From positions 62,001 to 126,000 of IMG/VR virus record IMGVR_UViG_3300035156_000206: a stretch of 64,000 bases of DNA; one strand, 5' to 3'. The notes below the pieces were generated by a model. The model saw only the letters and a program-made list of their open reading frames with translations. It was not told the DNA's origin and did not search any database. Shown here one piece after another: positions 225 through 62,553 of this stretch; the first letter of the stretch is position 1; each line of letters opens with the position of its first letter. A program made the translations under genes and the position numbers.

Positions 225-1862
225 ATGAACACCATCGAAACCAAAATGAACACCATTGCAGCATCAGTCCGTCACGGATTTGAATCCATTCAAGACCAAA
301 TCCAATCACTGCGCGGTGCATTGACAAGCGACTACAACGTTGCTCTTGATACCGATAGCTACAAACCATCGCACTTCCTGCAGTACCCGCCTAACACGGA
401 ATACGTGTTCTCGTACGTCGAAGCTCGTGGATCGAGCGACAAGCCGTCGTCGAAGATCATGAAGTCCTTGGAAAACTACCTAACGCCAGAGATGCTGAAG
501 CTGTTCAAGGCAGAGAATACCACTCAGCCATTCAACTTCACACTGATGTTCGGTCTCCAGTACATCAACAAAATGTACCTGAGCAAGCGCGTCACCAAAG
601 AAATGGTCGATTACGCTGCCAAGGAATGGAAAGCTCACGGCGAGCCATTCAACTACGACGGTTGGATGTACATTGTCAATGAGCTGGAAGGCAAGTTGCC
701 AGTTCGCATTCGTGCAGCCAAAGAGGGAGCCATCATCCCTCTCAAGAACGCGCTGATCACAGTTGAGAACACCGATCCCAAATGCTTCTGGCTGACTTCG
801 TACATTGAGCCAGCAATCCTCCGCGTATGGTATGGCATCACTGTTGGTACACTCAGTTGGACCATCAAGCAGATCATTGCTGCATACCTGCGCAAGAGCT
901 CAGATACCATGGATGGCCTGCTATTCAAGCTGCACGACTTCGGCTCACGTGGCGTCAGCTCGTACGAAAGTGCGGGCATTGGTGGTGCTGCTCACTTGGT
1001 CAACTTCATGGGCAGTGACACAATGCGTGCCATCCAGGTGCTGAAAGAGATCTACAATGTGGGCGAGGATGAAATGCCTGCATACTCGATCCCAGCTGGT
1101 GAACACAGTTCGTTCACTTCATGGCGCAAGGAATTCGAGAAAGAAGCTTACCGCAACATGATCGTCCAGTTTGGTAAGCCAGGCGCCTTGTTTGCTGCAG
1201 TGTCTGACTCGTACGACATCTTCAATGCAGTCGACAATATCTGGGGCAAAGAGCTGAAAGACGAACTGATTGCATCCGGTGCCACCGCAGTCATTCGCCC
1301 TGACAGTGGCGAACCAAAGGACATCGTCCTCAAAGTTGTGCAACTGCTGGACAAGAACTTCGGTTCGACCATCAACAGCAAGGGATACAAAGTGTTGCAC
1401 CCTTCAGTGCGTGTCATCCAAGGGGATGGCATTAACCTGGATAGCGTTAGCGAAATCTACGACACGCTGCTGGCTGCTGGCTATAGTGCAGACAACGTCG
1501 CCCTGGGAATGGGTGGTGGACTGCTGCAAATGGTCAATCGTGACACATTGCAGTTCGCAATGAAGTGCTCGGCTGCAAAGGTTGCTGGCGAATGGGTTGA
1601 CGTATACAAAGACCCAATCACCGACAGTGGCAAGCGCAGCAAGCGTGGCCGTGTTGGTCTGTTCCAGAACACGGTAACCAGCGAATATGCCACCATTCGC
1701 CTGGATGAAGTCACAGAGCTGAATGGAGAATTCGAGCACAAGGGCGAGATCTACATCGATGCGATGGACACCGTATTTGAGAATGGTGAAGTGCTTGTCG
1801 ATGAAAAGCTGGATGTCATCCGGGCACGATCGAACGATCACTACTTTATCGTCAGCCGTTAA
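225..1862 (+). CDS. nadV: Nicotinamide phosphoribosyltransferase (NAMPT)
   Basis: DTDSYKPSH, HDFGSRG, SIPAGEHS, VSDSYD, IRPDSG, VIQGDG, GMGGGLLQ..RDT motifs; SD AAGGAG. Confidence 0.95.
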   Translation: MNTIETKMNTIAASVRHGFESIQDQIQSLRGALTSDYNVALDTDSYKPSHFLQYPPNTEYVFSYVEARGSSDKPSSKIMKSLENYLTPEMLKLFKAENTTQPFNFTLMFGLQYINKMYLSKRVTKEMVDYAAKEWKAHGEPFNYDGWMYIVNELEGKLPVRIRAAKEGAIIPLKNALITVENTDPKCFWLTSYIEPAILRVWYGITVGTLSWTIKQIIAAYLRKSSDTMDGLLFKLHDFGSRGVSSYESAGIGGAAHLVNFMGSDTMRAIQVLKEIYNVGEDEMPAYSIPAGEHSSFTSWRKEFEKEAYRNMIVQFGKPGALFAAVSDSYDIFNAVDNIWGKELKDELIASGATAVIRPDSGEPKDIVLKVVQLLDKNFGSTINSKGYKVLHPSVRVIQGDGINLDSVSEIYDTLLAAGYSADNVALGMGGGLLQMVNRDTLQFAMKCSAAKVAGEWVDVYKDPITDSGKRSKRGRVGLFQNTVTSEYATIRLDEVTELNGEFEHKGEIYIDAMDTVFENGEVLVDEKLDVIRARSNDHYFIVSR

Positions 1863-2547: not shown

Positions 2548-3381
2548 ATGATCAAATCTTTTTACATCGTCAGGAAACTGAACGGTCCTTCCTCAGATGC
2601 TGTTGAATCGGTAGTCTCGGACATTGAGCGGTTCGCCGATAAGCATGACATCGACTTGGCAGATGACCTTTTGGATTGCACCGAGGATACGCTATTCATT
2701 GCAATCGGTGGCGACGGCACTGTCATCCACGCTGCTAAGCTGGCTTTGGATCACTCTGCCTCGGTGCTCGGGTTCAATCTGGGCAAGGTTGGCTTCTTGG
2801 CCGACTTTGAGACCAAGAACGTAGCTGCCACACTGCATGCTGCGTACGAAGGGCTGTTAGCCGAAGACGAACGCACTGTAATTGAGATCAAGGCGGGAGA
2901 GTTTTCATATCTCGCCCTCAATGACTTTGTGCTGTCTGCCAAGTTTTCAGACACCACACTGTCATATGACCTGTTTGTTGATCAGCACTTTGCTGGATCA
3001 CACACCGCAAATGGCGTGATCGTGTCCACTCCCACCGGTTCAACTGCATATGCTTTGTCAGTTGGTGGCTCGATCATCATGCCTACAGGCGCGGACGTAC
3101 TTCAAGTTGTGCCAATTGCAGCACAAACGTTGACATCCCGGCCACTGATCGTGCCAGCTGAACCCGGTGTATCGATCAAATTCCCGTACAGTTCCAACCG
3201 GCCAGTTACACTTCGAGCAGATGGCCAACAAGTTCGAGAGTATGGTGCCGATGGTAGTTGTGATCAGACGTACTATGATACCATTACCATTTCTCCATTG
3301 TTCAAGAAGGTCAAGCTGCTGCATCACGACAACTGGAACCACTTCGATGTGCTGAACAAAAAGCTCAACTGGAACAAGTGA
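2548..3381 (+). CDS. nadK: NAD kinase
   Basis: GGDGT, NLGKVGFL, LND, GVIVSTPTGSTAYALSVGG and ADG motifs. Confidence 0.95.
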   Translation: MIKSFYIVRKLNGPSSDAVESVVSDIERFADKHDIDLADDLLDCTEDTLFIAIGGDGTVIHAAKLALDHSASVLGFNLGKVGFLADFETKNVAATLHAAYEGLLAEDERTVIEIKAGEFSYLALNDFVLSAKFSDTTLSYDLFVDQHFAGSHTANGVIVSTPTGSTAYALSVGGSIIMPTGADVLQVVPIAAQTLTSRPLIVPAEPGVSIKFPYSSNRPVTLRADGQQVREYGADGSCDQTYYDTITISPLFKKVKLLHHDNWNHFDVLNKKLNWNK

Positions 3382-5421: not shown

Positions 5422-5463
5422 TTGCACCTAAACGTGGATCAATGTGATAATTGATCCACGTTT
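5422..5463 (+). promoter_or_regulatory. Sigma70-type promoter inside a 14-bp inverted repeat
   Basis: TTGCAC 5422-27, GATAAT 5446-51; arms 5430-43 and 5450-63 are perfect complements, followed by T-rich tract. Confidence 0.7.
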
Positions 5464-5469
5464 TCTTTT

Positions 5470-5874
5470 ATGGAGCACAGATTGGATAGTAACACAAAAA
5501 TAATCGCTACGGCCGACGAGGTCAACCAAAATGGTCGAAGGTACCTCCACTCAACTCTCGTTGAGATAGTGAACAGCCATGGCATGCGGGAAGTAATGGG
5601 AATGATTGACTCAGGAGGCACATCCCCATCATTCTCCGTTGACATCTCTCGTGTTTCTCACATTGTAAATAACCTTCGGATGGAAGGCAACCATCTCGTT
5701 GGTGACGTGAAGGTAATTCGTTCACCAGCTGGCGACATGCTCAACTCCCTGATGACAGCAAACGTCGATGTGCAATACACTCTATCAGGGTGTGGCAACG
5801 TCGAGATGATTGATGGCATCCGAACCATCACCAATTACCAACTTCGCAGTATTGATGTATCACCACTCAAATAG
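5470..5874 (+). CDS. T4 gp21-like prohead protease paralogue lacking catalytic His and Ser
   Basis: A..VNQNGRRY, SRVSH, GDVKVIRSPAG, IDV match the gp21/U9 pattern; GELxH becomes GMIDS, SSRG becomes TLSG. Confidence 0.7.
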   Translation: MEHRLDSNTKIIATADEVNQNGRRYLHSTLVEIVNSHGMREVMGMIDSGGTSPSFSVDISRVSHIVNNLRMEGNHLVGDVKVIRSPAGDMLNSLMTANVDVQYTLSGCGNVEMIDGIRTITNYQLRSIDVSPLK

Positions 5875-5881
5875 GAACTAA

Positions 5882-6106
5882 ATGGATAACCAACACCAAA
5901 AAATCAAGGGATACCGTGAACTCTCACAGGTAGAAATCGACGCTATGAACATCATCAAGGAACATGGCGTCAAGCTGGGCGTACTAATTGACAACCTCGA
6001 GATGATTGAGGGAATCGATAAGCGCTGGCTGGCCATGGCAAAGAGTGACCTGCAAAAAGGCATCATGTTTGCTGTTCGCTCTGTTGCCCAACCAACTACA
6101 TTCTAA
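5882..6106 (+). CDS. acb2: Anti-CBASS cyclic-oligonucleotide sponge Acb2
   Basis: MDNQHQKIKGYRELSQVEIDAMN..RWLAMAKSDLQKGIMFAVRSVAQPTTF closely follows the Acb2/Vs.4 pattern. Confidence 0.92.
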   Translation: MDNQHQKIKGYRELSQVEIDAMNIIKEHGVKLGVLIDNLEMIEGIDKRWLAMAKSDLQKGIMFAVRSVAQPTTF

Positions 6107-6361
6107 ATGAAGGACCCCATGCAACTCAATCACATTTGGGGATCCACGGATGGGTTAGTTCGCTACGATGAGTCAGCGGGTGCTGGCCAGAAGTATGTAC
6201 AGATTACTGAAATTGTAGTACCTACTGAATACGACAAGCAGCAGTTGCTTCTTGCATTCCGGTACATCCATGATCTCAAAGAAGCTGACAGTGACTTGAT
6301 GGCAGTGAATACGATCATGCATCTGTATACCTGTCCTGATATGATCAAGGTGGCTGGATAA
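6107..6361 (+). CDS. Hypothetical protein
   Basis: Abuts the acb2 stop; operon-coupled. Confidence 0.7.
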   Translation: MKDPMQLNHIWGSTDGLVRYDESAGAGQKYVQITEIVVPTEYDKQQLLLAFRYIHDLKEADSDLMAVNTIMHLYTCPDMIKVAG

Positions 6362-6585
6362 TGCCATTCATCCCATTTGTAGATGCCAAAGCAAAACCAC
6401 ACGAGCTCAGAGTAGCGGCTGAGCATGTGGAGACGGCGAAAATGGTCATGAAGAATCAGCTGTTAGAGATTCTTCTTGACTACCTATTGGGGAAACCCAA
6501 CAACGAACAGACAGCATATGAAGCTGACCAGATCACCATGCAGTATTGGAAAGACCTGGTAACAAGAGGAGGTATCGAATGGTAG
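6361..6585 (+). CDS. Hypothetical protein
   Basis: TAATG overlap. Confidence 0.7.
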   Translation: MPFIPFVDAKAKPHELRVAAEHVETAKMVMKNQLLEILLDYLLGKPNNEQTAYEADQITMQYWKDLVTRGGIEW

Positions 6586-6842
6586 TACTAAAAAAGATCG
6601 AGATTCGTCAGGTATTCAACCCTGACAATGGCGACGATGAAGGGTTTGGTGGCGATTACATCAAAGTGCAAGTGTTGATCGATCACGTGGTAGTTCAGAC
6701 GTATGGGGACTATTACCATGACAAGGGTGATTCCAAGGCCGAAGCATTTGTTCATGGTTATATTTACGCAATTCTGGGTTCAGATGACCGGACGAAATAC
6801 ACTGTTGAACGCACTTACGGATTAGATCGAACTGGGACCTAA
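6579..6842 (+). CDS. Hypothetical protein
   Basis: Start reassigned to ATG 6579 after GGAGG. Confidence 0.7.
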   Translation: MVVLKKIEIRQVFNPDNGDDEGFGGDYIKVQVLIDHVVVQTYGDYYHDKGDSKAEAFVHGYIYAILGSDDRTKYTVERTYGLDRTGT

Positions 6843-6849
6843 AAAGTTG

Positions 6850-6907
6850 TTGACGTACAACTGAAACAACAGGATGATATGCTCTGTTACTAACACGGAG
6901 CATATCA
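6850..6907 (+). promoter_or_regulatory. Sigma70-type promoter with RBS-covering hairpin
   Basis: TTGACG-17-GATGAT; arms TGATATGCTCTGT (6875-87) and ACGGAGCATATCA (6895-6907) cover the GGAG SD. Confidence 0.65.
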
Positions 6908-6910
6908 ACC

Positions 6911-8137
6911 ATGAACGAGCGTCAAATCCAACTGTTTTCACACTTAAAGAACCTCGTCGCAACGACTGAAGTGTTCCTTACAAAAATCCACCAACTCGAT
7001 GACTGTTTCTTCCAGGTATTTGACTACCGCCTGGCTCGATACTCTGACTTCCTGCTGCCTGATGCGCGGGAAGCACGTGGTATCATGTTCGAAGTTGACC
7101 GTGATGGTATGCCTCTGCGGTTGGCTTGCTGGATGCCTTCCAAGTTCTTCAACCTGAACGAAAATCCAATGACGATGGACCTCGACCTGTCTGATGCTAA
7201 CATCAGCGGTGTGATGGAGAAGCTTGATGGTTCAATCATCTCGACGATGATGCACAAAGGCAAGATGATCCTGAAGTCGAAGACCTCCCTGAGCTCAGAG
7301 CACGTCGCAGTGGCACAAGCATACCTCGAAAAGAACTCGTACTTCCGTGAGATCCTAGAATACCCAACAAAGAACGGCTATTCAGTTCACATGGAGCTGA
7401 CAAGTCCCGACCTGCGCATCGTGCTGGGCTACCCAGAAGTAAAGCTGACCATACTGTCGATGCGTCGTCTGTCCGATGGTGCAATGGTGAATCGTCATAA
7501 CTTCTACGATCACTTCCCATGTGATTACCGTGATGGCTTCCAACTTGATCAATGGGTCAAAGATATGGACCCAATTCAGTTTGCTGGTAAGGGCATCCCA
7601 TTTGATAACCAAGTGACTTTGTTCAAGCTGCGAGGCGTCGATCACAATGATACCATGTACGTATCGAAGTTCATTGATGCCATCAAAGCAATGGTAGGCG
7701 TGGAGGGCTACATTGTCCGATTGGTTAATGGTGAACACATCAAGATCAAGTGCGATTGGTACTGTGCATTGCATCACACCAAGGACTCAATCTCTGCACC
7801 CCGCCGTTTGTTTGAATGCATTCTGAATGGTGCTGCTGATGACCTGAAGGCTATGTTTGCAGTTGATCCAATTACGTGTGCACGCATCGTGGAAATGGAA
7901 GACAAGGTTGTTGCAAAATATAACTCGCTTGTCAACAAAGTTGAAACGTTCTACGATAGCAATCGCTCGCTCGATCGTAAGTCATACGCGATTGCAGCTA
8001 CCGCAGAAAAAGAAGACAACCTGATGGGCTTGAAAATGGCTTTGTATTTGGGCAAGACCAACGACTACAAAGAGTTCTTCTTGAAGCACCCAGAGATGTT
8101 TGGCATCAATGCAAAGGATGAAGGTTTCCCAGAATGA
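6911..8137 (+). CDS. rnlA: T4 Rnl1-type RNA ligase
   Basis: KFFNLNE, EKLDGS adenylation motif, EGYIV, KIKCDWY..LH. Confidence 0.92.
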   Translation: MNERQIQLFSHLKNLVATTEVFLTKIHQLDDCFFQVFDYRLARYSDFLLPDAREARGIMFEVDRDGMPLRLACWMPSKFFNLNENPMTMDLDLSDANISGVMEKLDGSIISTMMHKGKMILKSKTSLSSEHVAVAQAYLEKNSYFREILEYPTKNGYSVHMELTSPDLRIVLGYPEVKLTILSMRRLSDGAMVNRHNFYDHFPCDYRDGFQLDQWVKDMDPIQFAGKGIPFDNQVTLFKLRGVDHNDTMYVSKFIDAIKAMVGVEGYIVRLVNGEHIKIKCDWYCALHHTKDSISAPRRLFECILNGAADDLKAMFAVDPITCARIVEMEDKVVAKYNSLVNKVETFYDSNRSLDRKSYAIAATAEKEDNLMGLKMALYLGKTNDYKEFFLKHPEMFGINAKDEGFPE

Positions 8138-8334
8138 AAATCCTGTTCCAAGGAAAGATACCTGCAGAGCGCGAATACGTTTGCACCTGCAGTACTTGCA
8201 GCACCAAGTTTGAGTTCCAACAAAAAGAAGGAACCTACATCTCAGACCAACGAGATGGGGACTCAATATCAATCGCTTGCCCAACATGCAAAAAGACATG
8301 CTGGGTAAGTGCAAGCATGTACAAGAGGAATTAA
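8134..8334 (+). CDS. Zn-ribbon protein
   Basis: CSTC..CPTC. Confidence 0.75.
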   Translation: MKILFQGKIPAEREYVCTCSTCSTKFEFQQKEGTYISDQRDGDSISIACPTCKKTCWVSASMYKRN

Positions 8335-8711
8335 TGCTACCAAGTGAACTCCTGATTGCGGCGAAAGCCGTGATCACTTCTCCAGAATGCTGGACAACAG
8401 ATACATTTGCGCGTAATGCACAAGGAATGCCAGTATCTCCTTGGGCACCAACAGCCACATGTTGGTGCTCAGTTGGGGCAATGCAGAAAGTAGGATACAA
8501 GCCAATGGAAGATGGCGCCCCCAACCCTGGGCTACTGTATGGGGATGATGAAGGTGATACGGAACTGATTCAGAGTACCGCTATTCACTTTTTGTTCCAT
8601 GCCTTTGGCCCGGACGGAATTGGTACAAATAACGACCGATTGTCACATTCAGGAGTAATGGCTGTCTGGGACAAAGCTATCGAAGCAGCGAAACGAAAGG
8701 AAGTGGAATGA
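8334..8711 (+). CDS. Hypothetical protein, paralogue 1 of tandem triplet
   Basis: L..AKA.I..P..W....AR...G......A.CWC..GA....ND...H..V...WDKAIE; start at TAATG overlap. Confidence 0.8.
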   Translation: MLPSELLIAAKAVITSPECWTTDTFARNAQGMPVSPWAPTATCWCSVGAMQKVGYKPMEDGAPNPGLLYGDDEGDTELIQSTAIHFLFHAFGPDGIGTNNDRLSHSGVMAVWDKAIEAAKRKEVE

Positions 8712-9058
8712 CCACACCACTTGACCTACTAGTAGAAGCTCGTGCCTTAATTGCTGAGCGTAAGAACTGGATTTCTGGTGCATACGCTCAGAACGAGCAT
8801 GGCCGTGAAGTGAACCCTCGCAGTGAGCAGGCTTGCAAGTTCTGCTCATTGGGTGCAATCCAGCGAGCCTATGCAAATCGCAACATTGTTGACCCGTCAG
8901 TTGGGCTCTTTGTTGACTACGAAGCGCGTCACGCATTGGAGAAGGTTGTGGGATCCATCGCCTTGTTCAATGACAAGCATGGTCACCCTCAAGTGTTGGC
9001 TGCTTGGGACAAAGCAATTGAATCACTACGATTGGAACAAAATGCAAACGACAGCTGA
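8708..9058 (+). CDS. Hypothetical protein, paralogue 2 of tandem triplet
   Basis: Same motif: W..GAYA..E.G...A.KFC.LGA..FND..GH..VLAAWDKAIE. Confidence 0.8.
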   Translation: MTTPLDLLVEARALIAERKNWISGAYAQNEHGREVNPRSEQACKFCSLGAIQRAYANRNIVDPSVGLFVDYEARHALEKVVGSIALFNDKHGHPQVLAAWDKAIESLRLEQNANDS

Positions 9059-9428
9059 TCTGTTAAGGGCCGCTAAGGCAGAGATCGCAGATGAGACCAA
9101 GTGGACCCAATATACATTGGCTCGTGATTCCAATGGGAACGCACTCGAGATAGCTTGTGACCCAGGAGCCGTGTGTTTTTGCACTTTTGGGGCCATTATG
9201 AAGGTGTCTGGTTACAACGTAGAGCAGGCATATTGGAACCATTCGATACCAGCTTTGGACGAAACGAAGCGTCTGCACATGCTTGTGCAAGCGGTAGAGA
9301 ACCTGCGCGAGTACGCGAAGAAGGAAATGATTGGCGACACCAACGATTCATCTACCCATCCTCAAGTGATGGAATGGTTCGACAAAGCAATTGAACGTGC
9401 AGTACAACGGGAGGCAGAATATGGTTGA
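9042..9428 (+). CDS. Hypothetical protein, paralogue 3 of tandem triplet
   Basis: Same motif: W...LARD..G...A.CFC.FGA..TND..TH..V..WFDKAIE; start reassigned to 9042. Confidence 0.8.
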   Translation: MQTTADLLRAAKAEIADETKWTQYTLARDSNGNALEIACDPGAVCFCTFGAIMKVSGYNVEQAYWNHSIPALDETKRLHMLVQAVENLREYAKKEMIGDTNDSSTHPQVMEWFDKAIERAVQREAEYG

Positions 9429-10151: not shown

Positions 10152-10197
10152 TTGACTTCAGTTGAATATTATGTTAAGGTGAACATAATATTCAACT
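10152..10197 (+). promoter_or_regulatory. Sigma70-type promoter inside a 16-bp perfect inverted repeat
   Basis: TTGACT-17-TAAGGT; AGTTGAATATTATGTT (10160-75) / AACATAATATTCAACT (10182-97). Confidence 0.7.
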
Positions 10198-33354: not shown

Positions 33355-34158
33355 ATGAGCAACAGAAATGACATCCGCAGCAAGAACAACGACGATGACG
33401 ACGAAGAGGGTCCAGGCCAGAACCGAGTGCTTATGCAAGTTCAAGCCCCCTTCAAGACATACGAAGCCGTCCGTACCCAGCGTATTACCACGTTTTACCT
33501 GAGCAAGATCATCGGCGATCCTGATCAGTACACTGACATGATCCACAAGATTCGTGTTGCTGCCCCATCAGACATCGTATACATTCACCTGAACACTGGT
33601 GGTGGCCGTCTCGATACCGGCATTCAACTGATCAACGCAATGAAAGATAGTGCTGCTCGCATTATCGCAGTGCTTGATTCAAAGGCCTACTCCCTGGGCA
33701 CTCTCATCTTCCTGGCCGCGGACGAATTCATCGTTCACGACAACTGCATGTTCATGATCCACAACTACTCGTCCGTGACCGGCGGTAAAGGAAATGAGCA
33801 GAAGAGCGAGCTGCTGGCTACGGAAGCCTGGTTCAAAAAGCTCGCGAAGAAGTACTACTTCCCGTTCTTGTCGCACGACGAGATCGATAAGGTACTGAAC
33901 GGCCATGATATTTGGATGGACTCGGACGAAATCAAAAAGCGTCTGAAAAATATGGTCAAGCTGCAAGAAGAAGCAATGGCTGATGCTGATGCACCGAAAG
34001 TCCCACGTCGCCGTCGTGCTGACAAGACCCCTGCGGTGATTTCACTCGAAACCGGCGTGCTGCCAGAGCCAACTACAATTCAAACGACGGCTGGCATTGC
34101 CAGTCCTCCTGCAACACCTCCAACAGTCGTCGCCATTGTTCCTGCAAAGGCGAAGTAA
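33355..34158 (+). CDS. ClpP-like (S14) serine protease
   Basis: LNTGGG, AYSLG (Ser), FMIH (His), HDIW (Asp). Confidence 0.85.
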   Translation: MSNRNDIRSKNNDDDDEEGPGQNRVLMQVQAPFKTYEAVRTQRITTFYLSKIIGDPDQYTDMIHKIRVAAPSDIVYIHLNTGGGRLDTGIQLINAMKDSAARIIAVLDSKAYSLGTLIFLAADEFIVHDNCMFMIHNYSSVTGGKGNEQKSELLATEAWFKKLAKKYYFPFLSHDEIDKVLNGHDIWMDSDEIKKRLKNMVKLQEEAMADADAPKVPRRRRADKTPAVISLETGVLPEPTTIQTTAGIASPPATPPTVVAIVPAKAK

Positions 34159-55274: not shown

Positions 55275-55951
55275 TGAAGAAGCGGTTCAACCATACCCCG
55301 ATCACAGATACCGATCTCGATGCTTACATGAAGCATGGACTTCGGTTCTATGTGACACCCGAAGGCGATTATCCGTCCATTACAACCATCTTAGGCGGAA
55401 CAGCTGACAAGGGATGGTTGGATAGCTGGAGAACGTCACTTGGTGCATCAAAGGCTGATGCTGAGACACAACGCTGTGCTGATCGTGGCACAGCGGTCCA
55501 CCTATTGGCCGAAAAGTATCTCCAGAACGACGAGAACTATGACGCTAAGCAGCGGTACGAGAACGTCAAGCTGTTCAACCAGATCAAGATTCACGTCAAC
55601 AAGATCAACAACATTCTGGGCCAAGAGATTGCTTTGTATAGCACTCTACTAAGGCTTGCTGGGCGTTGCGATGTGATTGCTGAATACGATGGAGTGCTGT
55701 CGATCATCGACTTCAAGACATCGAATGGCAACAAAGACACGCACATGATCGAAGACTACTTCCTGCAATGTACGGCATATTCGCTGATGTTCGAAGAGAT
55801 GTTTGGTATTACGATTGACCAGATTGTGGTCATCATCTCTGTCGAAAAAGGACTCAGTGGTCAGGTTTTCAAACGTGACCGTGCTCCTTACATCACACCA
55901 CTAATTAAAAGGGCTAAGAAATTCCATGAATCAAGAAAAACCAAAGGCTGA
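55274..55951 (+). CDS. PD-(D/E)xK exonuclease (Cas4/lambda-exo-like)
   Basis: YPSITT.L, RGT.VH, AGRCD, IIDFKTS, Q.TAY. Confidence 0.9.
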   Translation: MKKRFNHTPITDTDLDAYMKHGLRFYVTPEGDYPSITTILGGTADKGWLDSWRTSLGASKADAETQRCADRGTAVHLLAEKYLQNDENYDAKQRYENVKLFNQIKIHVNKINNILGQEIALYSTLLRLAGRCDVIAEYDGVLSIIDFKTSNGNKDTHMIEDYFLQCTAYSLMFEEMFGITIDQIVVIISVEKGLSGQVFKRDRAPYITPLIKRAKKFHESRKTKG

Positions 55952-56654
55952 GCGTTACTACCCAGCAGAAGAAGCAGAGAAGGAAGACCCAAAGGATAGC
56001 CATGTTGGTGTTAATCTAGACATCACTCTGACTGGCTTCAATGGTGACCAACCGATCCGTGCAAAGATTGACACTGGTGCTCAGGCATCCAGTCTCCACG
56101 GAGAGAACATCAAAGTGGTATCAAGCGATGTAGAAGGATCCAGCTACGTATCGTTCTCGTACGGCGAGTTCCAGTACAAGATGCGCGTGGATAGCTTCCA
56201 AGCGATCACCAGTGCTGATGGCGGAACCGTCAACCGGCCTGTTGTGTGTATTTCAGCACGCATCCACGGTAAGTACATCGAAGGTGCTAGATTCAACCTG
56301 AACGATCGTGGAAACATGGACTACCCCGTTCTGATCGGTCTAGACTTGATTAAGACGGCTGGACTGACTATCGATCCAAGTATGTCAGAGATGGAAGTAT
56401 CCTTTGGGCCAAACGGCTTTGAAAAGGTAGAAGGATCTGATGAATCTGACGCCGTCCCAGATGCTGGGAGTGATTCCGTTGACATTTCATCTGATGTAAA
56501 GGATAATGATGTTTACAGTGATATTTCGCTCGCAAAGATCATGACTGAATGGTTGGCGGCAAATAAACACAAGACAGTGCAAGAAGTGTTTGCACATTTG
56601 TTTTTAATCGACGGCCCTAAACCAGCCACAGACTTTAATGACCCAACAAAGTAA
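55926..56654 (+). CDS. Retropepsin-like protease (RimK-associated putative protease family)
   Basis: AKIDTGA..SSLH, RP.V, L.DR..M.YPVLIG. Confidence 0.85.
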   Translation: MNQEKPKAERYYPAEEAEKEDPKDSHVGVNLDITLTGFNGDQPIRAKIDTGAQASSLHGENIKVVSSDVEGSSYVSFSYGEFQYKMRVDSFQAITSADGGTVNRPVVCISARIHGKYIEGARFNLNDRGNMDYPVLIGLDLIKTAGLTIDPSMSEMEVSFGPNGFEKVEGSDESDAVPDAGSDSVDISSDVKDNDVYSDISLAKIMTEWLAANKHKTVQEVFAHLFLIDGPKPATDFNDPTK

Positions 56655-57967: not shown

Positions 57968-59155
57968 ATGTCACGTCTCACCCAAGTCAAACATGGCTTA
58001 AAGCAAATCTCCCAAGGCACCCAGCGTGTCTTGGGTCTCACGAAGATCATGTCTCTTCTGAGCCCTTATTTCAAATCCCTATCGAAAAATACCTCTGTTG
58101 GTTACGCCCAGATTGCTGAAGGCGTCAAGCACATCTTTGGTCAAACTAAGGACCAGCTCCGTGACAAGTGGCTCCACCGTCTGATGGTCGACATGGATGA
58201 AAAGAAGCGTAAAGATTGGTTCTCCGTCTATCAAAACTGGTATCGTTATTACCACGATGAAGCAGCCGGTCGTCTCCTCCATGAGCGATCCAGTCGTTGT
58301 CCGTTTACAGCCAAAGAGTTTGTTGCTTTGGCGCATGGCATCATGCAAGGTCTTGGCACCTCCAAGCTAATTGGAGTACAACCTTTCATTGCATCCCATG
58401 GGCTTGTGTATCGGATGGGATTTGTTATGCCTGAGGTGGAACCGGTTGAACAGGTAGAAAATCCATCAGCTCTTGATCATGTTCCAGCGAATCCTCATTC
58501 ATTTGAGTTCCAGGGCAGGTTCGAAATCACCTCCAATACAATCGAGACTCGCTATAGGAAACTGGCGGCCCGGGTACACTACGATGCTTCACAAGTAACA
58601 GAATCAGATCAGAAGCAGTTGATCCTAGCATTTTTGGCATCGGACATCGCTATGGATATCGATCAAGAACACCTGTCCAACATCGAAGATTTGGCTATTC
58701 CAACCGAAGATTTGCCAGACCACTACCTAGCAGTAGGCATTTGCAAGGCTTCTAACCAAATCGCACAACGTGCCCGTCGTGGTGCTGGCAACTGGGCGAT
58801 CGTTAGTGCTAAAGCAAAAGCCGTGTTGCAGGAAAGCCGAGCAGTAAAATGGTTTGATCAGCCTACCGAAAGTGGCATTTTGACTCACATTGGTACTCTC
58901 AATGATACTATTGCCTTGTACGAGCGTAATGATCTGAACCCTGGCGAGCCGTATGGCAGTGATGTGTTGGTTGGGTACAAAGGATCGTCTGATGTCGATG
59001 CTGGTTACATATTTGCTCCACAGATTCCCGCTGCGATGTCTGGGGTGCTGATTGACCCCAACACATTCCAGCCAGTGTGGTCAATGATGACACGCTATGG
59101 TACCTACAAGTCTAAAGATGCCGAGAACTACTTCACAAAGTTCAATCTGATCTAA
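57968..59155 (+). CDS. Truncated T4 gp23-like capsid protein paralogue with novel N terminus
   Basis: IGVQP..G.V..M, RKL.A, I..DIDQE, N.IAQ..RRGAGNW..VS, VGYKG...DAG...P..P, DP.TFQP...TRYG. Confidence 0.8.
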   Translation: MSRLTQVKHGLKQISQGTQRVLGLTKIMSLLSPYFKSLSKNTSVGYAQIAEGVKHIFGQTKDQLRDKWLHRLMVDMDEKKRKDWFSVYQNWYRYYHDEAAGRLLHERSSRCPFTAKEFVALAHGIMQGLGTSKLIGVQPFIASHGLVYRMGFVMPEVEPVEQVENPSALDHVPANPHSFEFQGRFEITSNTIETRYRKLAARVHYDASQVTESDQKQLILAFLASDIAMDIDQEHLSNIEDLAIPTEDLPDHYLAVGICKASNQIAQRARRGAGNWAIVSAKAKAVLQESRAVKWFDQPTESGILTHIGTLNDTIALYERNDLNPGEPYGSDVLVGYKGSSDVDAGYIFAPQIPAAMSGVLIDPNTFQPVWSMMTRYGTYKSKDAENYFTKFNLI

Positions 59156-59859: not shown

Positions 59860-62553
59860 ATGAGTTATATTTCCACATGGCGCAATCGGGATACGATTGT
59901 CGTTTGGGAACGTACCGAAGAAGGCCGCATCACAAAGAACTACCCTTCCCCGTACTACTTCTACATTGAGAACCCTGACGGCAAGTTTAAGTCGATCTTC
60001 GGCAAGAACCTTAGCCGCCTAAAGTTCAAGACGCAGGATGAATTCAAGGAAGCTGTTCAAGAATGCTTGGATGATGACATCCCTGTATACGAGTCTGACA
60101 TTGGTCCAGACTTGAAAGTGCTTGCGACGCACTACTTCGAAGTTGAGCCACCGAAGCTGAATACCACACTGTTAGACATTGAGGTCGATTACGACCCATT
60201 GATTGGTTTCAGCTCGATCACCAACCCTTACGCTCCTATCAACGCGATTGCGTTACACCACTACTGGTCTAAAGAATCAGTCGTGTATGCTGTACCCCCA
60301 CCACACTGGGATCCAAGTACCTTCGATGAGTCGCTGCGACTCCTGTCGAAGATCGTTATATGCAAGAACGAACGTGAGCTGTTGCAGCACATGCTGCGTG
60401 AATTCAAAGACTCTGACTGCCTATCTGGCTGGAACAGCGACTTCTTTGACTTGCCGTACATTTGTAAGCGCATTGAGCTCGTGCTCGGTAAGACAGAGCT
60501 TGACAAGATGTCCTTTCCAAACTGTGGCAAGAACACAGTTCGTTGGCGCGAAGTTGAGAAGTTTGGTAAGATCTCACACACGGTAGAACTGCGTGGCCGG
60601 ATCAAGCTCGACTATATGGAACTGTTCAAGAAGTACGAGATGGACAAGCGAGCCAATTACAAGTTGGAAACCATTGCTGAAGAGATCTTACCAGAGCTGA
60701 AGAAGCTGACGTACGATGGATCACTGGCTCAACTGTACCGCAACGACTTCAACCATTTCATTCGATACAACATTCGAGATACGGAGATTCTGAAGGGCTT
60801 TGAAGACAAGCTCGGTTACATCGACTTGGCTAACGTAATGTATCACTCCGCATGTGGTCAAGCCTCACAAGTGTTCGGTACTGTGCGTCTAGCTGACTTA
60901 TCGATTATCAACTACTGTCACAACACCATGAACGTAAAAGTTCCTGACTGGGTGGCAAAGGAAGACGGTTCAATTGAAGGAGCTATTGTGCTGTTGCCTC
61001 AAGTAGGCATGCACGATTGGACGGGATCTGTCGACATTGGATCCCTGTATCCATCAGCTATCCGAAGCATTAACATCTCACCTGAGACATTGGTCGCACA
61101 GTTTTCTGCTAAGGCAGATGCGTGGTTAGCCATTGCCAAAGGTCTGGATACTGAACTTCTGTTGGAGTACAATGATGGTAGCACTGAGCTGCACACTGCA
61201 GATGAATGGCGCACAATCATTCATGATAACAAGTGGGCTGTGTCAGGGTACGGAACGATCTTTAGGCAGGACAAACAAGGCGTAGTTCCAGCACTGCTAA
61301 CCGATTGGTTCTCAACTCGTAAGAAGTACCAGAAGTTGAAAGTCGAATGGGGCGACAAATATCGTGAGTTGGAGAAGCTGGGCTTGAAGGATACGCCCGA
61401 GTACGAAGAGGCTAAGATGAAGACAGCCTACTTCGATCGCTTGCAGTATGTCTACAAGATCAAACTGAACTCGACTTATGGTGCGTTGACCAACTATCGA
61501 TTCCGGTTCTTTGACCTGCGTACGGGTGAATCAACGACTGCAACTGGTCGACAGATTCTGTTCCACCAGGTCCGCAAGATTGCTGAGACATTGGATGGTA
61601 ATTATGATGTGGATTTCCCACAGTACAATACTACCAAAGACTGCGACGAGAAAGGCATGCCACACCACTTAGCTCTTCACGGTCCTAAGTTCAATGGCGA
61701 GTTCCAAACAGAATCAGTCATCTATGGCGACACTGACTCTTGTTACTTCCTTACACACGCGGATAACGAGGCAGATGCGATTAAAATGGCGGACTACGTT
61801 GCAGATGTTGTCAACAAGTCTTTCCAGGAATTCATGCAGAGGTCGTTCTTGTGTCACCCAGGCTTTGATAACCTGATTAAGGCAGGCCGTGAAGTGGTGT
61901 CTGATCGTGGGATCTTTGTCGATAAGAAGCGGTATGTACTTCACCTAGTGAACCTGGACGGCAAGCCTGTTGATAAACTGAAGGTGATGGGTCTTGAAAT
62001 GCGTAAGACCACTACTCCAAAGGTCATCCAGAACTTCTTGAAAGAGATCGTATCACGCATCCTTCGCGGCGAAGACTGGGACGAAATCAATGATCAGATC
62101 ATTGAATATCGTGACCATGTTGTCACCAAGATGGATTTGCTGGATATTGGACTTCCTAAGGGTTGCAACAAGATGGAGGAGTATGCTCTCAAGAAGGCAG
62201 CTGGCAGGGACTCAACAGGGAAGAAGTACACTATTCCTGGACACGTTGCTGCTGCACTGCACTACAACGAGGCGCTGAAGATATATGGCGACTTGGAGAG
62301 CCCAGAGATTGTTTCAGAGATGAAGGTGAAGGTGTTCTACTTGGACAAGCCCGTAAATGGTTTCAAGAGCATTGCACTGCCAACAGATCTGGATCGAGCT
62401 CCTGATTGGTTTACAGAGAACTTCAATATCAACCGTGGCGATCACGCACAACGATTGATTGACAATAATCTAGGCCACATCTTTAAAGCGATCGGCAAAG
62501 AAGTACCAACAAGACAAACACTGCTGTTTAACAGCCTCTACAGCTTCGAATAG
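59860..62553 (+). CDS. Family B DNA polymerase (gp43-like)
   Basis: LDIEV exo I, GWNS..FD exo II, YNIRD exo III, DIGSLYPS, KIKLNS.YG, YGDTDS, KKRY. Confidence 0.97.
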   Translation: MSYISTWRNRDTIVVWERTEEGRITKNYPSPYYFYIENPDGKFKSIFGKNLSRLKFKTQDEFKEAVQECLDDDIPVYESDIGPDLKVLATHYFEVEPPKLNTTLLDIEVDYDPLIGFSSITNPYAPINAIALHHYWSKESVVYAVPPPHWDPSTFDESLRLLSKIVICKNERELLQHMLREFKDSDCLSGWNSDFFDLPYICKRIELVLGKTELDKMSFPNCGKNTVRWREVEKFGKISHTVELRGRIKLDYMELFKKYEMDKRANYKLETIAEEILPELKKLTYDGSLAQLYRNDFNHFIRYNIRDTEILKGFEDKLGYIDLANVMYHSACGQASQVFGTVRLADLSIINYCHNTMNVKVPDWVAKEDGSIEGAIVLLPQVGMHDWTGSVDIGSLYPSAIRSINISPETLVAQFSAKADAWLAIAKGLDTELLLEYNDGSTELHTADEWRTIIHDNKWAVSGYGTIFRQDKQGVVPALLTDWFSTRKKYQKLKVEWGDKYRELEKLGLKDTPEYEEAKMKTAYFDRLQYVYKIKLNSTYGALTNYRFRFFDLRTGESTTATGRQILFHQVRKIAETLDGNYDVDFPQYNTTKDCDEKGMPHHLALHGPKFNGEFQTESVIYGDTDSCYFLTHADNEADAIKMADYVADVVNKSFQEFMQRSFLCHPGFDNLIKAGREVVSDRGIFVDKKRYVLHLVNLDGKPVDKLKVMGLEMRKTTTPKVIQNFLKEIVSRILRGEDWDEINDQIIEYRDHVVTKMDLLDIGLPKGCNKMEEYALKKAAGRDSTGKKYTIPGHVAAALHYNEALKIYGDLESPEIVSEMKVKVFYLDKPVNGFKSIALPTDLDRAPDWFTENFNINRGDHAQRLIDNNLGHIFKAIGKEVPTRQTLLFNSLYSFE

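What the first reader, a model, noticed from the sequence alone, without database searches (positions are those of the whole stretch)
5470..6106. Catalytically dead prohead-protease paralogue directly upstream of acb2: candidate decoy anti-CBASS cassette
Seen: the 134 aa ORF follows the T4 gp21 pattern (A..VN.N.R.Y, RVSH, G...I.SP.G, ..D V), but the catalytic His (GELxH becomes GMIDS) and Ser (SSRG becomes TLSG) are replaced and it ends before the PS loop. It is first in an operon behind a sigma70 promoter, far from any head genes, and 7 bp upstream of a clear Acb2. Established: prohead proteases have been reported as triggers of type I CBASS, and Acb2 sequesters CBASS second messengers. Inference: an early, inactive protease mimic could occupy the CD-NTase or sensor before the true late protease appears, giving a two-layer block (sensing plus signalling).
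Basis: partly seen in the sequence, partly recalled or inferred. Interest (0 to 1): 0.82.

Follow-up and report, generated by a model that had tools for sequence, protein, structure and literature searches.

The report
Dead prohead-protease paralogue beside Acb2
A jumbo phage encodes a small copy of its head-maturation protease that has lost its catalytic residues, just upstream of a known anti-CBASS sponge gene; it belongs to a large unnamed phage family of such dead proteases, and whether it blocks bacterial immunity is a plausible, untested idea.

Summary
ORF 5470-5874 (134 aa) has the T4 gp21 prohead-protease fold (AF2 pLDDT 94; Foldseek 5JBL E 2e-7, TM 0.75-0.78; hhalign 97%). Thr51 and Thr104 replace catalytic His85 and Ser140, and the N- and C-terminal parts of real proteases are missing. 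Seven bases downstream lies a clear 74-aa Acb2.

It is not a recent private paralogue. An exhaustive search gave 613 relatives. The best are mostly 120-150-aa proteins forming one clade in which Ser is usually Arg and His usually Met. The family is unnamed and was not found in bacterial genomes. A similar diverged protease paralogue was noted in phiKZ-like phages in 2017, function unknown.

The "cassette" reading is only weakly supported. Pairing with Acb2 occurs in one phage lineage (window, L001, L002), where the whole block is syntenic. It is absent from about ten other family loci and from four other Acb2 contexts. Other members sit among replication, RNA-repair and NAD genes, and some carry Tat-like or capsid-targeting-like N-termini.

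A 2026 preprint shows that gp21 activity switches CBASS on by cleaving CD-NTase loops, so a non-cleaving shield is mechanistically sensible and testable. Function remains inferred.

The parts
5422..5451 (+). sigma-70-like promoter candidate: TTGCAC, 18-nt spacer, TGtGATAAT (extended -10)
   Evidence: Read from the sequence. The -35 matches only 3 of 6, so the consensus scan did not list it, and the pattern is not enriched in the window. The relative L001 has, at the same place, a terminator hairpin, then TTGTCG-17-TATGAT, then GAGGAG and the ATG.
5430..5469 (+). perfect 14-bp stem, 6-nt loop hairpin followed by TTTTCTTTT: terminator-like, ending one base before the ATG and overlapping the -10
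   Evidence: Similar hairpins abut the start codons of Rnl1 (6872-6910) and of the CCA-adding enzyme (10160-10197).
5470..5874 (+). 134-aa catalytically dead, truncated gp21-fold protein (pseudoprotease); Thr51, Thr104 and Asp129 at the His/Ser/Asp columns
5882..6106 (+). Acb2 (74-aa form), cyclic-oligonucleotide sponge family; Tyr11 and Lys26 kept
6107..6361 (+). 84-aa ORF, same operon, start abuts the Acb2 stop; no family match; absent from L001
6361..6585 (+). 74-aa ORF, same operon; orthologue in L001 (51% identity); only a weak cREC_REC hint (E 0.056)
6546..6842 (+). 98-aa ORF (true start uncertain), last gene before the next promoter-like site; weak orthologue in L001
6850..6910 (+). next promoter-like site (TTGACG-17-GATGAT) and a 16-nt hairpin ending at the Rnl1 ATG: likely end of the transcription unit
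6911..8137 (+). T4 Rnl1-type RNA ligase (context: RNA repair)

Best explanation
Shown. The ORF encodes a compact, well-folded, non-catalytic derivative of the T4-type (S77) prohead protease. It is a divergent member of a large, single-origin, phage-restricted family of 120-150-aa 'pseudoproteases'. These keep the protease core and its conserved motifs but have replaced the catalytic triad. They lack the N-terminal propeptide region and the C-terminal region that real proteases carry.

Inferred. In this phage lineage the gene heads a short operon behind a host-type promoter, together with Acb2 (and, in relatives, a small-alarmone-hydrolase-like HD protein). The operon sits inside a block of counter-defence-type functions: NAD salvage, RNA ligase and tRNA repair. 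The most likely role is a non-cleaving binder on the protease-substrate axis that lowers protease-triggered immune sensing. It could occupy the L/I-x-E 'tripwire' activation loops of CD-NTases, or capture stray active protease outside proheads. Less CBASS signal would then be made, and Acb2 would mop up what is made. This reading is only slightly ahead of the head-assembly rival.
For: Fold and dead site.

Family:
- 613 relatives at E<=1e-3; the top 150 are mostly 120-150 aa.
- 145 of 146 full-length dead members form one clade, and a 133-member core has support 0.945.
- The catalytic columns carry new conserved residues: Ser to Arg in 108 of 156, His to Met in 57 of 156. That argues for a retained, re-purposed groove rather than decay.

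Operon and context:
- 7-nt and 0-nt gaps between genes, with a terminator-like hairpin upstream.
- L001 shows terminator, promoter, SD, then dead protease, HD_4, Acb2, PTPS with 9-16-nt gaps. L002 shows dead protease, HD-like gene, Acb2.
- The HD protein resembles (p)ppApp and small alarmone hydrolases.
- Counter-defence-like surroundings: NAMPT, NAD kinase, Rnl1 and CCA enzyme in the window; NMNAT-Nudix as well in L001.
- Acb2 does sit next to other anti-defence genes elsewhere, for example Sequestin-Acb2 in L135.
- The gene evolves faster than its syntenic neighbours: 43% identity against 62-73%.

Other support:
- This phage has a Gp23-type capsid gene, so an S77-type protease is expected.
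- Mechanistic premise: gp21 activity cleaves CD-NTase loops at L-x-E-like sites and switches CBASS on (PMC12991175).
Against: - Linkage to Acb2 is confined to one lineage in which the whole block is syntenic, so it is a single evolutionary observation.
- About ten other family loci lack Acb2 within the DNA held.
- Four other Acb2 contexts lack the family. In fHe-Yen9-04 the two genes are 248 kb apart.
- The window protein lacks the family's own hallmark Arg and Met (it has Thr/Thr), so it may not share the family's binding mode.
- About 11 members carry Tat-like or capsid-targeting-like N-termini, which does not fit a cytoplasmic decoy.
- One member lies close to portal and baseplate genes, another near a Gp23-like gene.
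- Late in infection, abundant capsid and scaffold substrates would compete for any substrate groove (inference).
- There is no Shine-Dalgarno sequence, the -35 is weak, and one gene caller called only residues 71-134 (P0001).
- No binding, expression or CBASS data exist.
Confidence: 0.3

Rival explanations
1. Head-assembly accessory. The dead protease is a prohead-core or scaffold-associated protein, or a regulator of the true protease. It might cap cleavage sites or form mixed oligomers until the shell is complete. It would have nothing to do with immunity, and its place beside Acb2 would be an accident of synteny.
For: - It derives from a prohead core component.
- gp21 is pentameric and must be held inactive until assembly is complete (PMC9958956).
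- T4 already encodes a non-homologous gp21 inhibitor, Inh.
- Some family members lie near portal and baseplate genes (L121) or near a Gp23-like gene (L115).
- Some carry an N-terminus resembling the T4 capsid-targeting sequence MKTYQEFIAE.
- Ali et al. 2017 discussed the phiKZ-type paralogue in the context of head evolution.
Against: - It lacks the C-terminal region inferred to target proteases into proheads.
- Most loci lie among replication, RNA-repair, NAD or small early-type genes, not in head modules.
- A host-type promoter precedes the gene here and in L001.
- There is no similarity to the T4 core protein gp68.
Confidence: 0.25
2. A counter-defence or host-takeover protein with a target other than CBASS sensing. 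Candidates include another protease-sensing or capsid-sensing system, a competitor phage's or satellite's protease, or a periplasmic target for the members with Tat-like signals. The groove or surface would be re-purposed for a new ligand.
For: - New conserved residues (Arg, Met, Asn) sit at the old catalytic positions.
- The family's neighbourhoods are varied accessory regions: ADP-ribosylglycohydrolase, PTH2, TROVE, RNA ligases, Sir2, Nudix, PhoH.
- Up to two copies occur per genome.
- Some members have Tat-like N-termini.
- Family-wide linkage to Acb2 is lacking.
Against: - No specific alternative target is indicated by any result.
- No informative domain fusions were found.
- In the one lineage at issue, the neighbours are nucleotide-signal antagonists.
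Confidence: 0.25
3. It is still an enzyme that uses a different nucleophile/base pair, for example Thr104 or Ser106 with His64 or His75, plus Asp129.
For: - Asp129 is retained, Thr sits at the Ser140 column, and Ser106 lies two residues on.
- Ser63-His64 is nearly invariant in the family.
- The fHe-Yen9-04 g109 and SPN3US gp117 paralogues keep Ser and Asp.
Against: - No His at or near the H85 column is conserved in the family.
- The Ser column is Arg in most members.
- Ser63-His64 are also conserved in active proteases but absent in T4 gp21, so they are structural. As adjacent residues on one strand they cannot form a dyad.
- Thr104 and Ser106 are not conserved in relatives.
Confidence: 0.05
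4. It is a decaying remnant of a duplicated protease gene with no function.
For: - The window protein has lost even the family's own hallmark residues.
- It is the most diverged gene of the syntenic block apart from NAMPT.
- There is no Shine-Dalgarno sequence.
Against: - The ORF is intact and the same length as hundreds of relatives.
- The fold is predicted with very high confidence.
- Motifs are conserved along the whole length, including the N-terminal half.
- The gene is retained in relatives that differ by 27-66% in neighbouring proteins.
Confidence: 0.05

Closest known systems
T4 gp21 prohead protease (MEROPS/Pfam Peptidase_S77, formerly U9; PDB 5JBL)
   Same: Same fold (TMq 0.75-0.78) and shared motifs (N-x-N-G-R-x-Y; G at the His loop; T-P-x-G; G-x-G after the Ser column; D in S-I-D-V).
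   Different: No catalytic His or Ser. About 40 N-terminal and about 45 C-terminal residues are missing. It falls below the Pfam gathering score. It is not in a head module and sits behind a host-type promoter.
Diverged prohead-protease paralogues of phiKZ-like giant phages (SPN3US gp117, 201phi2-1 gp206 145 aa, PhiPA3 gp143 136 aa; Ali et al. 2017, PMC5694885)
   Same: A short second copy of the prohead protease in a giant phage that lacks the protease's C-terminal part and the catalytic His. Function unknown.
   Different: Those are related to the S80 (phiKZ gp175) proteases and keep Ser and Asp. The present family is S77-like and usually has Arg at the Ser column. Direct homology between the two sets was not tested here. 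BFVD lists a 124-aa Phabio protein among structural matches.
Acb2 (PaMx33 p26, T4 Vs.4) cyclic-oligonucleotide sponge
   Same: The downstream gene is a clear member. The proposed two-layer logic would put the dead protease upstream of Acb2 in the same pathway.
   Different: There is no sequence or fold relation between the dead protease and Acb2. The Acb2 here is the 74-aa form with a roughly 19-residue internal deletion relative to PaMx33, a form shared by more than 800 homologues.
T4 Inh (minor head protein, inhibitor of gp21)
   Same: A phage-encoded non-catalytic protein that restrains the prohead protease, so it is a functional precedent for the 'restrain the protease' variants (annotation seen).
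   Different: Inh was not compared with the ORF here, and no similarity is claimed. It is packaged in the head and sits near head genes in T4.
Viral FLIPs and other pseudoproteases (dead caspase-like or rhomboid-like proteins); from general knowledge, not tested here
   Same: Catalytically dead protease homologues that act as competitive binders to block protease-dependent signalling.
   Different: Eukaryotic and eukaryote-virus systems with unrelated folds. The analogy is mechanistic only.

Membership tests
Peptidase S77 (T4 gp21-type prohead protease) | gp21/herpesvirus-protease-like fold | tested here: met
   AF2 pLDDT 94.3; Foldseek 5jbl_A E 1.8e-7, TMq 0.75-0.78.
Peptidase S77 (T4 gp21-type prohead protease) | Score above the Pfam PF03420 gathering threshold | tested here: not met
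   23 bits against a cut-off of 27. PHROG 207 gives E 1.3e-11.
Peptidase S77 (T4 gp21-type prohead protease) | Catalytic His (T4 H85) and Ser (T4 S140) | tested here: not met
   Thr51 and Thr104 occupy these columns. All 106 active homologues sampled have H/S/D. The 5JBL chain carries Ala at both positions, as expected for an inactivated mutant.
Peptidase S77 (T4 gp21-type prohead protease) | Third triad residue (Asp) | tested here: met
   Asp129 aligns with the invariant Asp column. The triad assignment follows PMC5694885.
Peptidase S77 (T4 gp21-type prohead protease) | N-terminal propeptide region and C-terminal (prohead-targeting) region; gene in the head module | tested here: not met
   The match covers profile positions 49-165 of 198. 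Median length is 132 aa for dead members against 223 aa for active proteases. Neighbours are NAD, RNA-repair and Acb2 genes.
Short dead gp21-like family (unnamed; defined here) | 120-150 aa, core only, groups with the dead clade | tested here: met
   Best hits are 125-135-aa proteins at 32-43% identity. The window protein falls inside the 145-member dead clade.
Short dead gp21-like family (unnamed; defined here) | Hallmark substitutions: Arg at the Ser column (F-R-x-x-G-x-G), Met at the His column (G-x-x-G-M-P) | tested here: not met
   The window has Y-T-L-S-G-C-G and G-M-I-D-S-G-G-T-S-P, which makes it a divergent member.
Acb2 sponge (downstream gene) | Acb2/Tad1 hairpin domain above threshold; ligand-contact Tyr11 and Lys26 | tested here: met
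   PF24729 62.9 bits against a cut-off of 27; 8H2J E 1.6e-16; both residues are present in the alignment. The role of these residues is recalled from the Acb2 structural literature.
Acb2 sponge (downstream gene) | Binds cyclic di- or trinucleotides | not testable with these tools
   Needs a binding assay.
Conserved 'dead protease + Acb2' anti-CBASS cassette | The pairing recurs in independent genomic backgrounds | tested here: not met
   It occurs only in the window, L001 and L002, one syntenic lineage. It is absent from the other family loci and from other Acb2 loci.
Anti-CBASS protein acting at the sensing step | Blocks CD-NTase activation by a prohead protease | not testable with these tools
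   No multimer prediction or assay is available. The premise comes from PMC12991175.
phiKZ-type diverged protease paralogues (SPN3US gp117 group) | Sequence relationship to gp117, gp206 or gp143 | not tested
   Those sequences were not fetched. The only evidence is a structural match to a 124-aa Phabio protein in BFVD.

The most novel reading that the evidence does not exclude
The short dead gp21-like proteins are a new class of phage counter-defence 'pseudoproteases' that act at the sensing step. By binding L/I-x-E tripwire loops of CD-NTases (or the free protease) without cleaving, they stop protease-triggered CBASS from firing. In this jumbo-phage lineage that first layer is co-transcribed with a second layer, the Acb2 sponge, and in relatives with an alarmone-hydrolase-like enzyme.
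Probability: 0.17. Interest if true: 0.85.

Novelty: new variant of a known kind. Interest (0 to 1): 0.55.

Why it matters
Known anti-CBASS proteins such as Acb1, Acb2 and Acb4 act on the nucleotide signal. I know of none that blocks the sensing step (general knowledge), and the paper searches run here found none. A March 2026 preprint shows that many CD-NTases are tripwires cut by prohead proteases. A natural, catalytically dead copy of that protease, expressed apart from the head genes and next to Acb2, is therefore the obvious candidate for a sensing-step antagonist.

The experiment is simple: CBASS operon plus protease, with and without this protein. Independently of that idea, the survey shows a large, single-origin, unnamed family of truncated dead prohead proteases, in which the catalytic Ser is usually replaced by Arg, spread through large uncultured phages. 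That is a clean target for structural and functional work. A cultured handle also exists: the Yersinia phage fHe-Yen9-04 g109 relative.

Tried and rejected
- Word-indexed protein search with the 134-aa ORF found nothing. Only the exhaustive HMMER search did.
- Megablast of the region against cultured phages gave no match. tblastn with the ORF and with P0005 hit only true proteases in cultured phages, apart from one 595-kb uncultured phage.
- T4 gp68 as a possible known dead relative was rejected: hhalign probability 0.15%.
- The Lap adhesin hit in PDB (E 0.0025) is a repeat-region coincidence with no fold support.
The smaller A5 found no member in 185,579 species genomes, using a single pattern, so this is a weak negative.
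- N-terminally extended or fused members (P0009, P0016, P0053, L112) gave no extra Pfam domain.
- The small downstream ORFs gave no family hits.
- A promoter-pattern search showed no enrichment.
- I could not locate this phage's true prohead protease. Only 64 kb of the 292-kb contig is held, and walking the contig was too costly.
- I could not measure residue distances in the model because coordinates are not exposed, and no multimer prediction was available.
- The tree placed the window protein with other motif-poor members rather than with its best pairwise hits P0002 and P0004. Deep nodes are weakly supported (0.03-0.84), so sub-family placement is unsettled.
Full report
**What is there.** ORF 5470..5874 (+, 134 aa) is intact. 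It is followed after 7 bases by a 74-aa ORF at 5882..6106. The downstream ORF is a clear Acb2:
- Pfam Acb2_Tad1_hairpin, 62.9 bits against a cut-off of 27.
- PaMx33 p26 (PDB 8H2J), E 1.6e-16, and T4 Vs.4 (7UQ2).
- Tyr11 and Lys26 are kept.

It is the 74-aa form, with an internal deletion of about 19 residues. More than 800 homologues share this form, including those of Rak2-like jumbo phages. The window comes from IMG/VR contig UViG_3300035156_000206, 291,967 bp; window position 1 is contig position 62,001. The contig is an uncultured jumbo phage with no near DNA match among cultured phages.

**The 134-aa protein is a gp21-fold protein without the catalytic pair.**
- Sequence evidence: PHROG 207 'head maturation protease', E 1.3e-11. 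Pfam Peptidase_S77, 23 bits, just under the gathering score. tblastn to the prohead proteases of XacN1 and PA5oct, 30% identity over 120 residues, E 6e-7.
- Profile evidence: a profile of the family matches T4 gp21 at hhalign probability 97%, E 6.7e-11, and PDB 5JBL at E 1.1e-10.
- Structure: with a 90-sequence alignment AlphaFold2 gives pLDDT 94.3 and pTM 0.86. Foldseek returns the three 5JBL chains listed as its only hits at E<=0.001 (E 1.8e-7 to 7e-7, TM 0.75-0.78, rmsd 2.5), with herpesvirus proteases far behind.
- Catalytic columns: T4 His85 aligns with Thr51, Ser140 with Thr104, and the Asp of 'VDAV' with Asp129. All 106 full-length active homologues I sampled have His/Ser/Asp at these three columns.
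- Truncation: the ORF covers only profile positions 49-165 of 198. It lacks the N-terminal segment and everything from the 'PS' segment onward.

**It is not a private paralogue but a member of a large, old family.** The exhaustive search of 1.84 billion representatives gave 613 relatives at E<=1e-3. The best 150 are dominated by proteins of 120-150 aa that match end to end at 28-43% identity.
- In these proteins, G-E-L-[DN]-H-P of the proteases is replaced by G-x-x-G-M-P, and S-S-R-G-x-G by F-R-x-x-G-x-G.
- Over 156 dead sequences, the Ser column is Arg in 108, the His column is Met in 57, and the Asp column is Asn in 56 and Asp in 53.
- A maximum-likelihood tree of 229 non-redundant sequences puts 145 dead members in one pure clade, and a 133-member core has support 0.945. 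The three outliers are two truncated active proteases and one odd sequence.
- Median length is 132 aa for dead members against 223 aa for active proteases.
- The family has no Pfam, NCBIfam or PHROG identity of its own. ESM-Atlas look-alikes are viral 'hypothetical proteins'. A pattern scan of 185,579 species genomes found none (weak negative).
- Cultured phages almost never have a close member. The exception I found is Yersinia phage fHe-Yen9-04 g109 (144 aa), which lacks the His but keeps S-S-R-G and the Asp.
- The window protein is a divergent member. It has lost the family's own Arg and Met and groups with other motif-poor sequences.

**Literature.**
- Ali et al. 2017 (PMC5694885) reported what they called an unprecedented diverged paralogue of the prohead protease in phiKZ-like giant phages: SPN3US gp117, 201phi2-1 gp206 (145 aa) and PhiPA3 gp143 (136 aa). 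It lacks the C-terminal part and the aligned His, and its function is unknown.
- Hobbs & Kranzusch 2026 (PMC12991175, preprint) show that T4 gp21 is sufficient to activate CBASS and that its active site is required. CD-NTases carry a disordered activation loop that is cleaved, with an LPE motif for gp21. About 24% of CBASS operons have such loops.
- An earlier screen linked prohead protease mutations to escape from type I CBASS (10.1101/2023.05.21.541620).
- I found no paper proposing or testing a dead protease as an antagonist.

**Transcription unit.**
- A perfect 14-bp hairpin with a 6-nt loop and a T-run lies at 5430-5469, directly before the ATG, and scores as terminator-like.
- Overlapping it is TTGCAC, an 18-nt spacer, and TGtGATAAT. 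The -35 is weak (3 of 6) and the -10 is extended. The consensus scan did not list this site, and the pattern is not enriched in the window.
- There is no Shine-Dalgarno sequence. One gene caller called only residues 71-134 (P0001). Family-wide conservation of the N-terminal half (D16, N19, N21, R23, Y25) nonetheless argues that the full ORF is translated.
- The relative L001 has a cleaner layout at the same place: terminator hairpin, TTGTCG-17-TATGAT, GAGGAG, ATG.
- Downstream genes are tightly packed: Acb2, then ORFs of 84, 74 and 98 aa. The next promoter-like site and hairpin lie in front of Rnl1.
- 'First gene of a host-promoter operon with Acb2' is therefore reasonable, but it rests on weak signals in the window itself.

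**Does the pairing with Acb2 recur?** Only within one lineage.
- L001 (a 74.7-kb contig) carries, in order: NMNAT-Nudix, NAMPT, NAD kinase, two unknown genes, dead protease, an HD_4 protein, Acb2, PTPS, small ORFs, Rnl1, DUF6197 and a CCA-adding enzyme. This is the same order as the window.
- Orthologue identities between the window and L001 are 70% (NAD kinase), 73% (Rnl1), 73% (Acb2), 62% (CCA enzyme) and 43% (dead protease).
- L002 (1.3 kb) shows dead protease, an HD-like gene and Acb2.
- The HD protein resembles (p)ppApp hydrolase and small alarmone hydrolases (7SMG, E 1e-10).
- Because the whole block is syntenic, these three loci count as one evolutionary observation.
- Elsewhere the family sits next to many different genes:
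  - UvsW-like helicase and ribonucleotide reductase (L005).
  - UvsW-like helicase and DUF4326 (L051).
  - PolA (L070).
  - DNA polymerase III alpha (L079).
  - A Zeta/AAA kinase (L113).
  - ADP-ribosylglycohydrolase, PTH2, TROVE, RNA ligase and a Gp23-like gene, with two family copies (L115).
  - Runs of small ORFs in a 257-kb phage (L122/L123).
  - A Rad50-like gene, a baseplate gene and the portal (L121).
  - PhoH, Nudix, Sir2 and RNA ligase (fHe-Yen9-04).
  No Acb2 lies in the DNA held for any of these loci.
- From the Acb2 side, fHe-Yen9-04 and three other backgrounds carrying 68-70%-identical Acb2 have no family member nearby. One of them has Sequestin immediately upstream of Acb2, which shows that Acb2 does cluster with other anti-defence genes.

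The 'cassette' is therefore not a conserved module.

**Observations that cut across the decoy idea.** About 11 of the sampled dead members carry an N-terminal extension of the form M-D-R-R-x-F-L-x-E-[TS] followed by 15-20 hydrophobic residues. They are 160-180 aa long, except the 297-aa ORF of the 595-kb uncultured phage LR756511.
- This reads as a twin-arginine export signal.
- It also resembles the T4 capsid-targeting sequence MKTYQEFIAE of IPII and IPIII, which I verified from the T4 genome. It contains the L/I-x-E protease motif as well.
- Either reading places those members outside the cytoplasm or inside capsids.
- The window protein has no such extension.

**What it most likely does.**
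- Shown: a stable, non-catalytic protease-core protein, conserved as a family. New conserved residues at the old active site imply a retained but re-purposed groove.
- Inferred: in this lineage it has been placed in an operon of nucleotide-signal antagonists. That operon lies inside a region rich in counter-defence-type functions (NAD salvage, RNA ligase, tRNA repair).
- The phage has a Gp23-type capsid gene, so an S77-type protease, the kind shown to trip CBASS, is expected.
- The best reading is a non-cleaving binder that shields CD-NTase tripwire loops or restrains stray protease, with Acb2 as the second layer. I give this about 0.3.
- A head-assembly or protease-regulation role (0.25) and a different counter-defence target (0.25) are close rivals. 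Residual enzyme activity and a decaying remnant are unlikely (0.05 each).
CBASS senses cleavage, so the protein would act as a shield or inhibitor, not as a mimic that 'occupies the sensor' in place of a ligand.

**Verdict.** The gene is a new (S77-type, Ser-to-Arg) variant of a phenomenon noted once before in giant phages. Its anti-CBASS role is a good, cheap-to-test hypothesis, but present support is one lineage's synteny plus a recent mechanistic premise.

Noticed in passing
window 57968-59155 (+): A 395-aa ORF of the Gp23 major-capsid family (Pfam PF07068, E 4e-33, C-terminal part only; phrog_138). It sits between SLT-like, Zn-protease-like and 2OG-oxygenase-like ORFs and the DNA polymerase, not in a head module. 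L115 likewise has a 440-aa Gp23-family gene 3 kb from a dead protease. These may be orphan capsid-protein paralogues in jumbo phages.
   Followed up: partly
family members P0006, P0035, P0067, P0083, P0084, P0127, P0148; L070 3377-3910; L112 7872-8765: An N-terminal M-D-R-R-x-F-L-x-E-[TS] motif plus a hydrophobic stretch on about 11 dead-protease family members. It looks like a Tat signal, or like a T4-type capsid-targeting sequence (compare T4 IPII/IPIII MKTYQEFIAE). Unexplained.
   Followed up: partly
L001 6407-6898; L002 482-982: In relatives, a gene of about 165 aa lies between the dead protease and Acb2. It is an HD_4 protein most similar to (p)ppApp and small alarmone hydrolases (7SMG, E 1e-10). 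It is absent from the window.
   Followed up: partly
window 225-1862, 2548-3381 (and L001 1-4144): An NAD block: NAMPT and an NAD kinase in the window. The relative L001 also has NMNAT-Nudix upstream, resembling phage NAD-reconstitution pathways that counter NAD-depleting defences. NAMPT is only 34% identical between the two phages, although its neighbours are 53-73% identical.
   Followed up: no
window 6872-6910 and 10160-10197: Strong hairpins (16 nt at 88% complementarity, and 16 nt perfect) end at or just before the start codons of Rnl1 and the CCA-adding enzyme, each just after a TTGAC-type -35. The same arrangement occurs at 5430-5463. This may be a recurrent promoter/stem-loop regulatory element.
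   Followed up: partly
window 8277-9428: Two tandem DUF6197 ORFs (8277-8711 and 8708-9058), followed by an overlapping 201-aa ORF (8823-9428) that was not checked, lie downstream of Rnl1. L001 has one DUF6197 gene at the same place.
   Followed up: no
L115 3302-3730 and 6001-6405 (350-kb contig rootL2_10001819): Two dead gp21-like genes lie 2.3 kb apart in one jumbo phage, near ADP-ribosylglycohydrolase, PTH2, a TROVE/Ro-like protein and an RNA ligase.
   Followed up: partly
L135 4557-5225: A Sequestin (PF21825) gene lies immediately upstream of a 74-aa Acb2 in an unrelated phage contig, an example of two sponge genes side by side.
   Followed up: no
L130 4965-5399 (Yersinia phage fHe-Yen9-04 g109): A cultured-phage relative (144 aa) of the family lacks the catalytic His but keeps S-S-R-G and the Asp, as described for SPN3US gp117. 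It sits next to PhoH, Nudix, Sir2 and an RNA-ligase fragment, 248 kb from that phage's Acb2 (g448).
   Followed up: partly
window 33355-34158 and 55926-56654: A ClpP/SDH-type serine protease-like ORF (phrog_1827) and a putative ATP-dependent Zn-protease-like ORF (PF05618) lie in the replication region. Their roles are unknown.
   Followed up: no
window 5680-5874 (P0001): The public protein collection holds a 64-aa product identical to residues 71-134, while the ESM Atlas holds the full 134 aa. Gene callers disagree on the start, probably because no Shine-Dalgarno sequence precedes 5470.
   Followed up: partly
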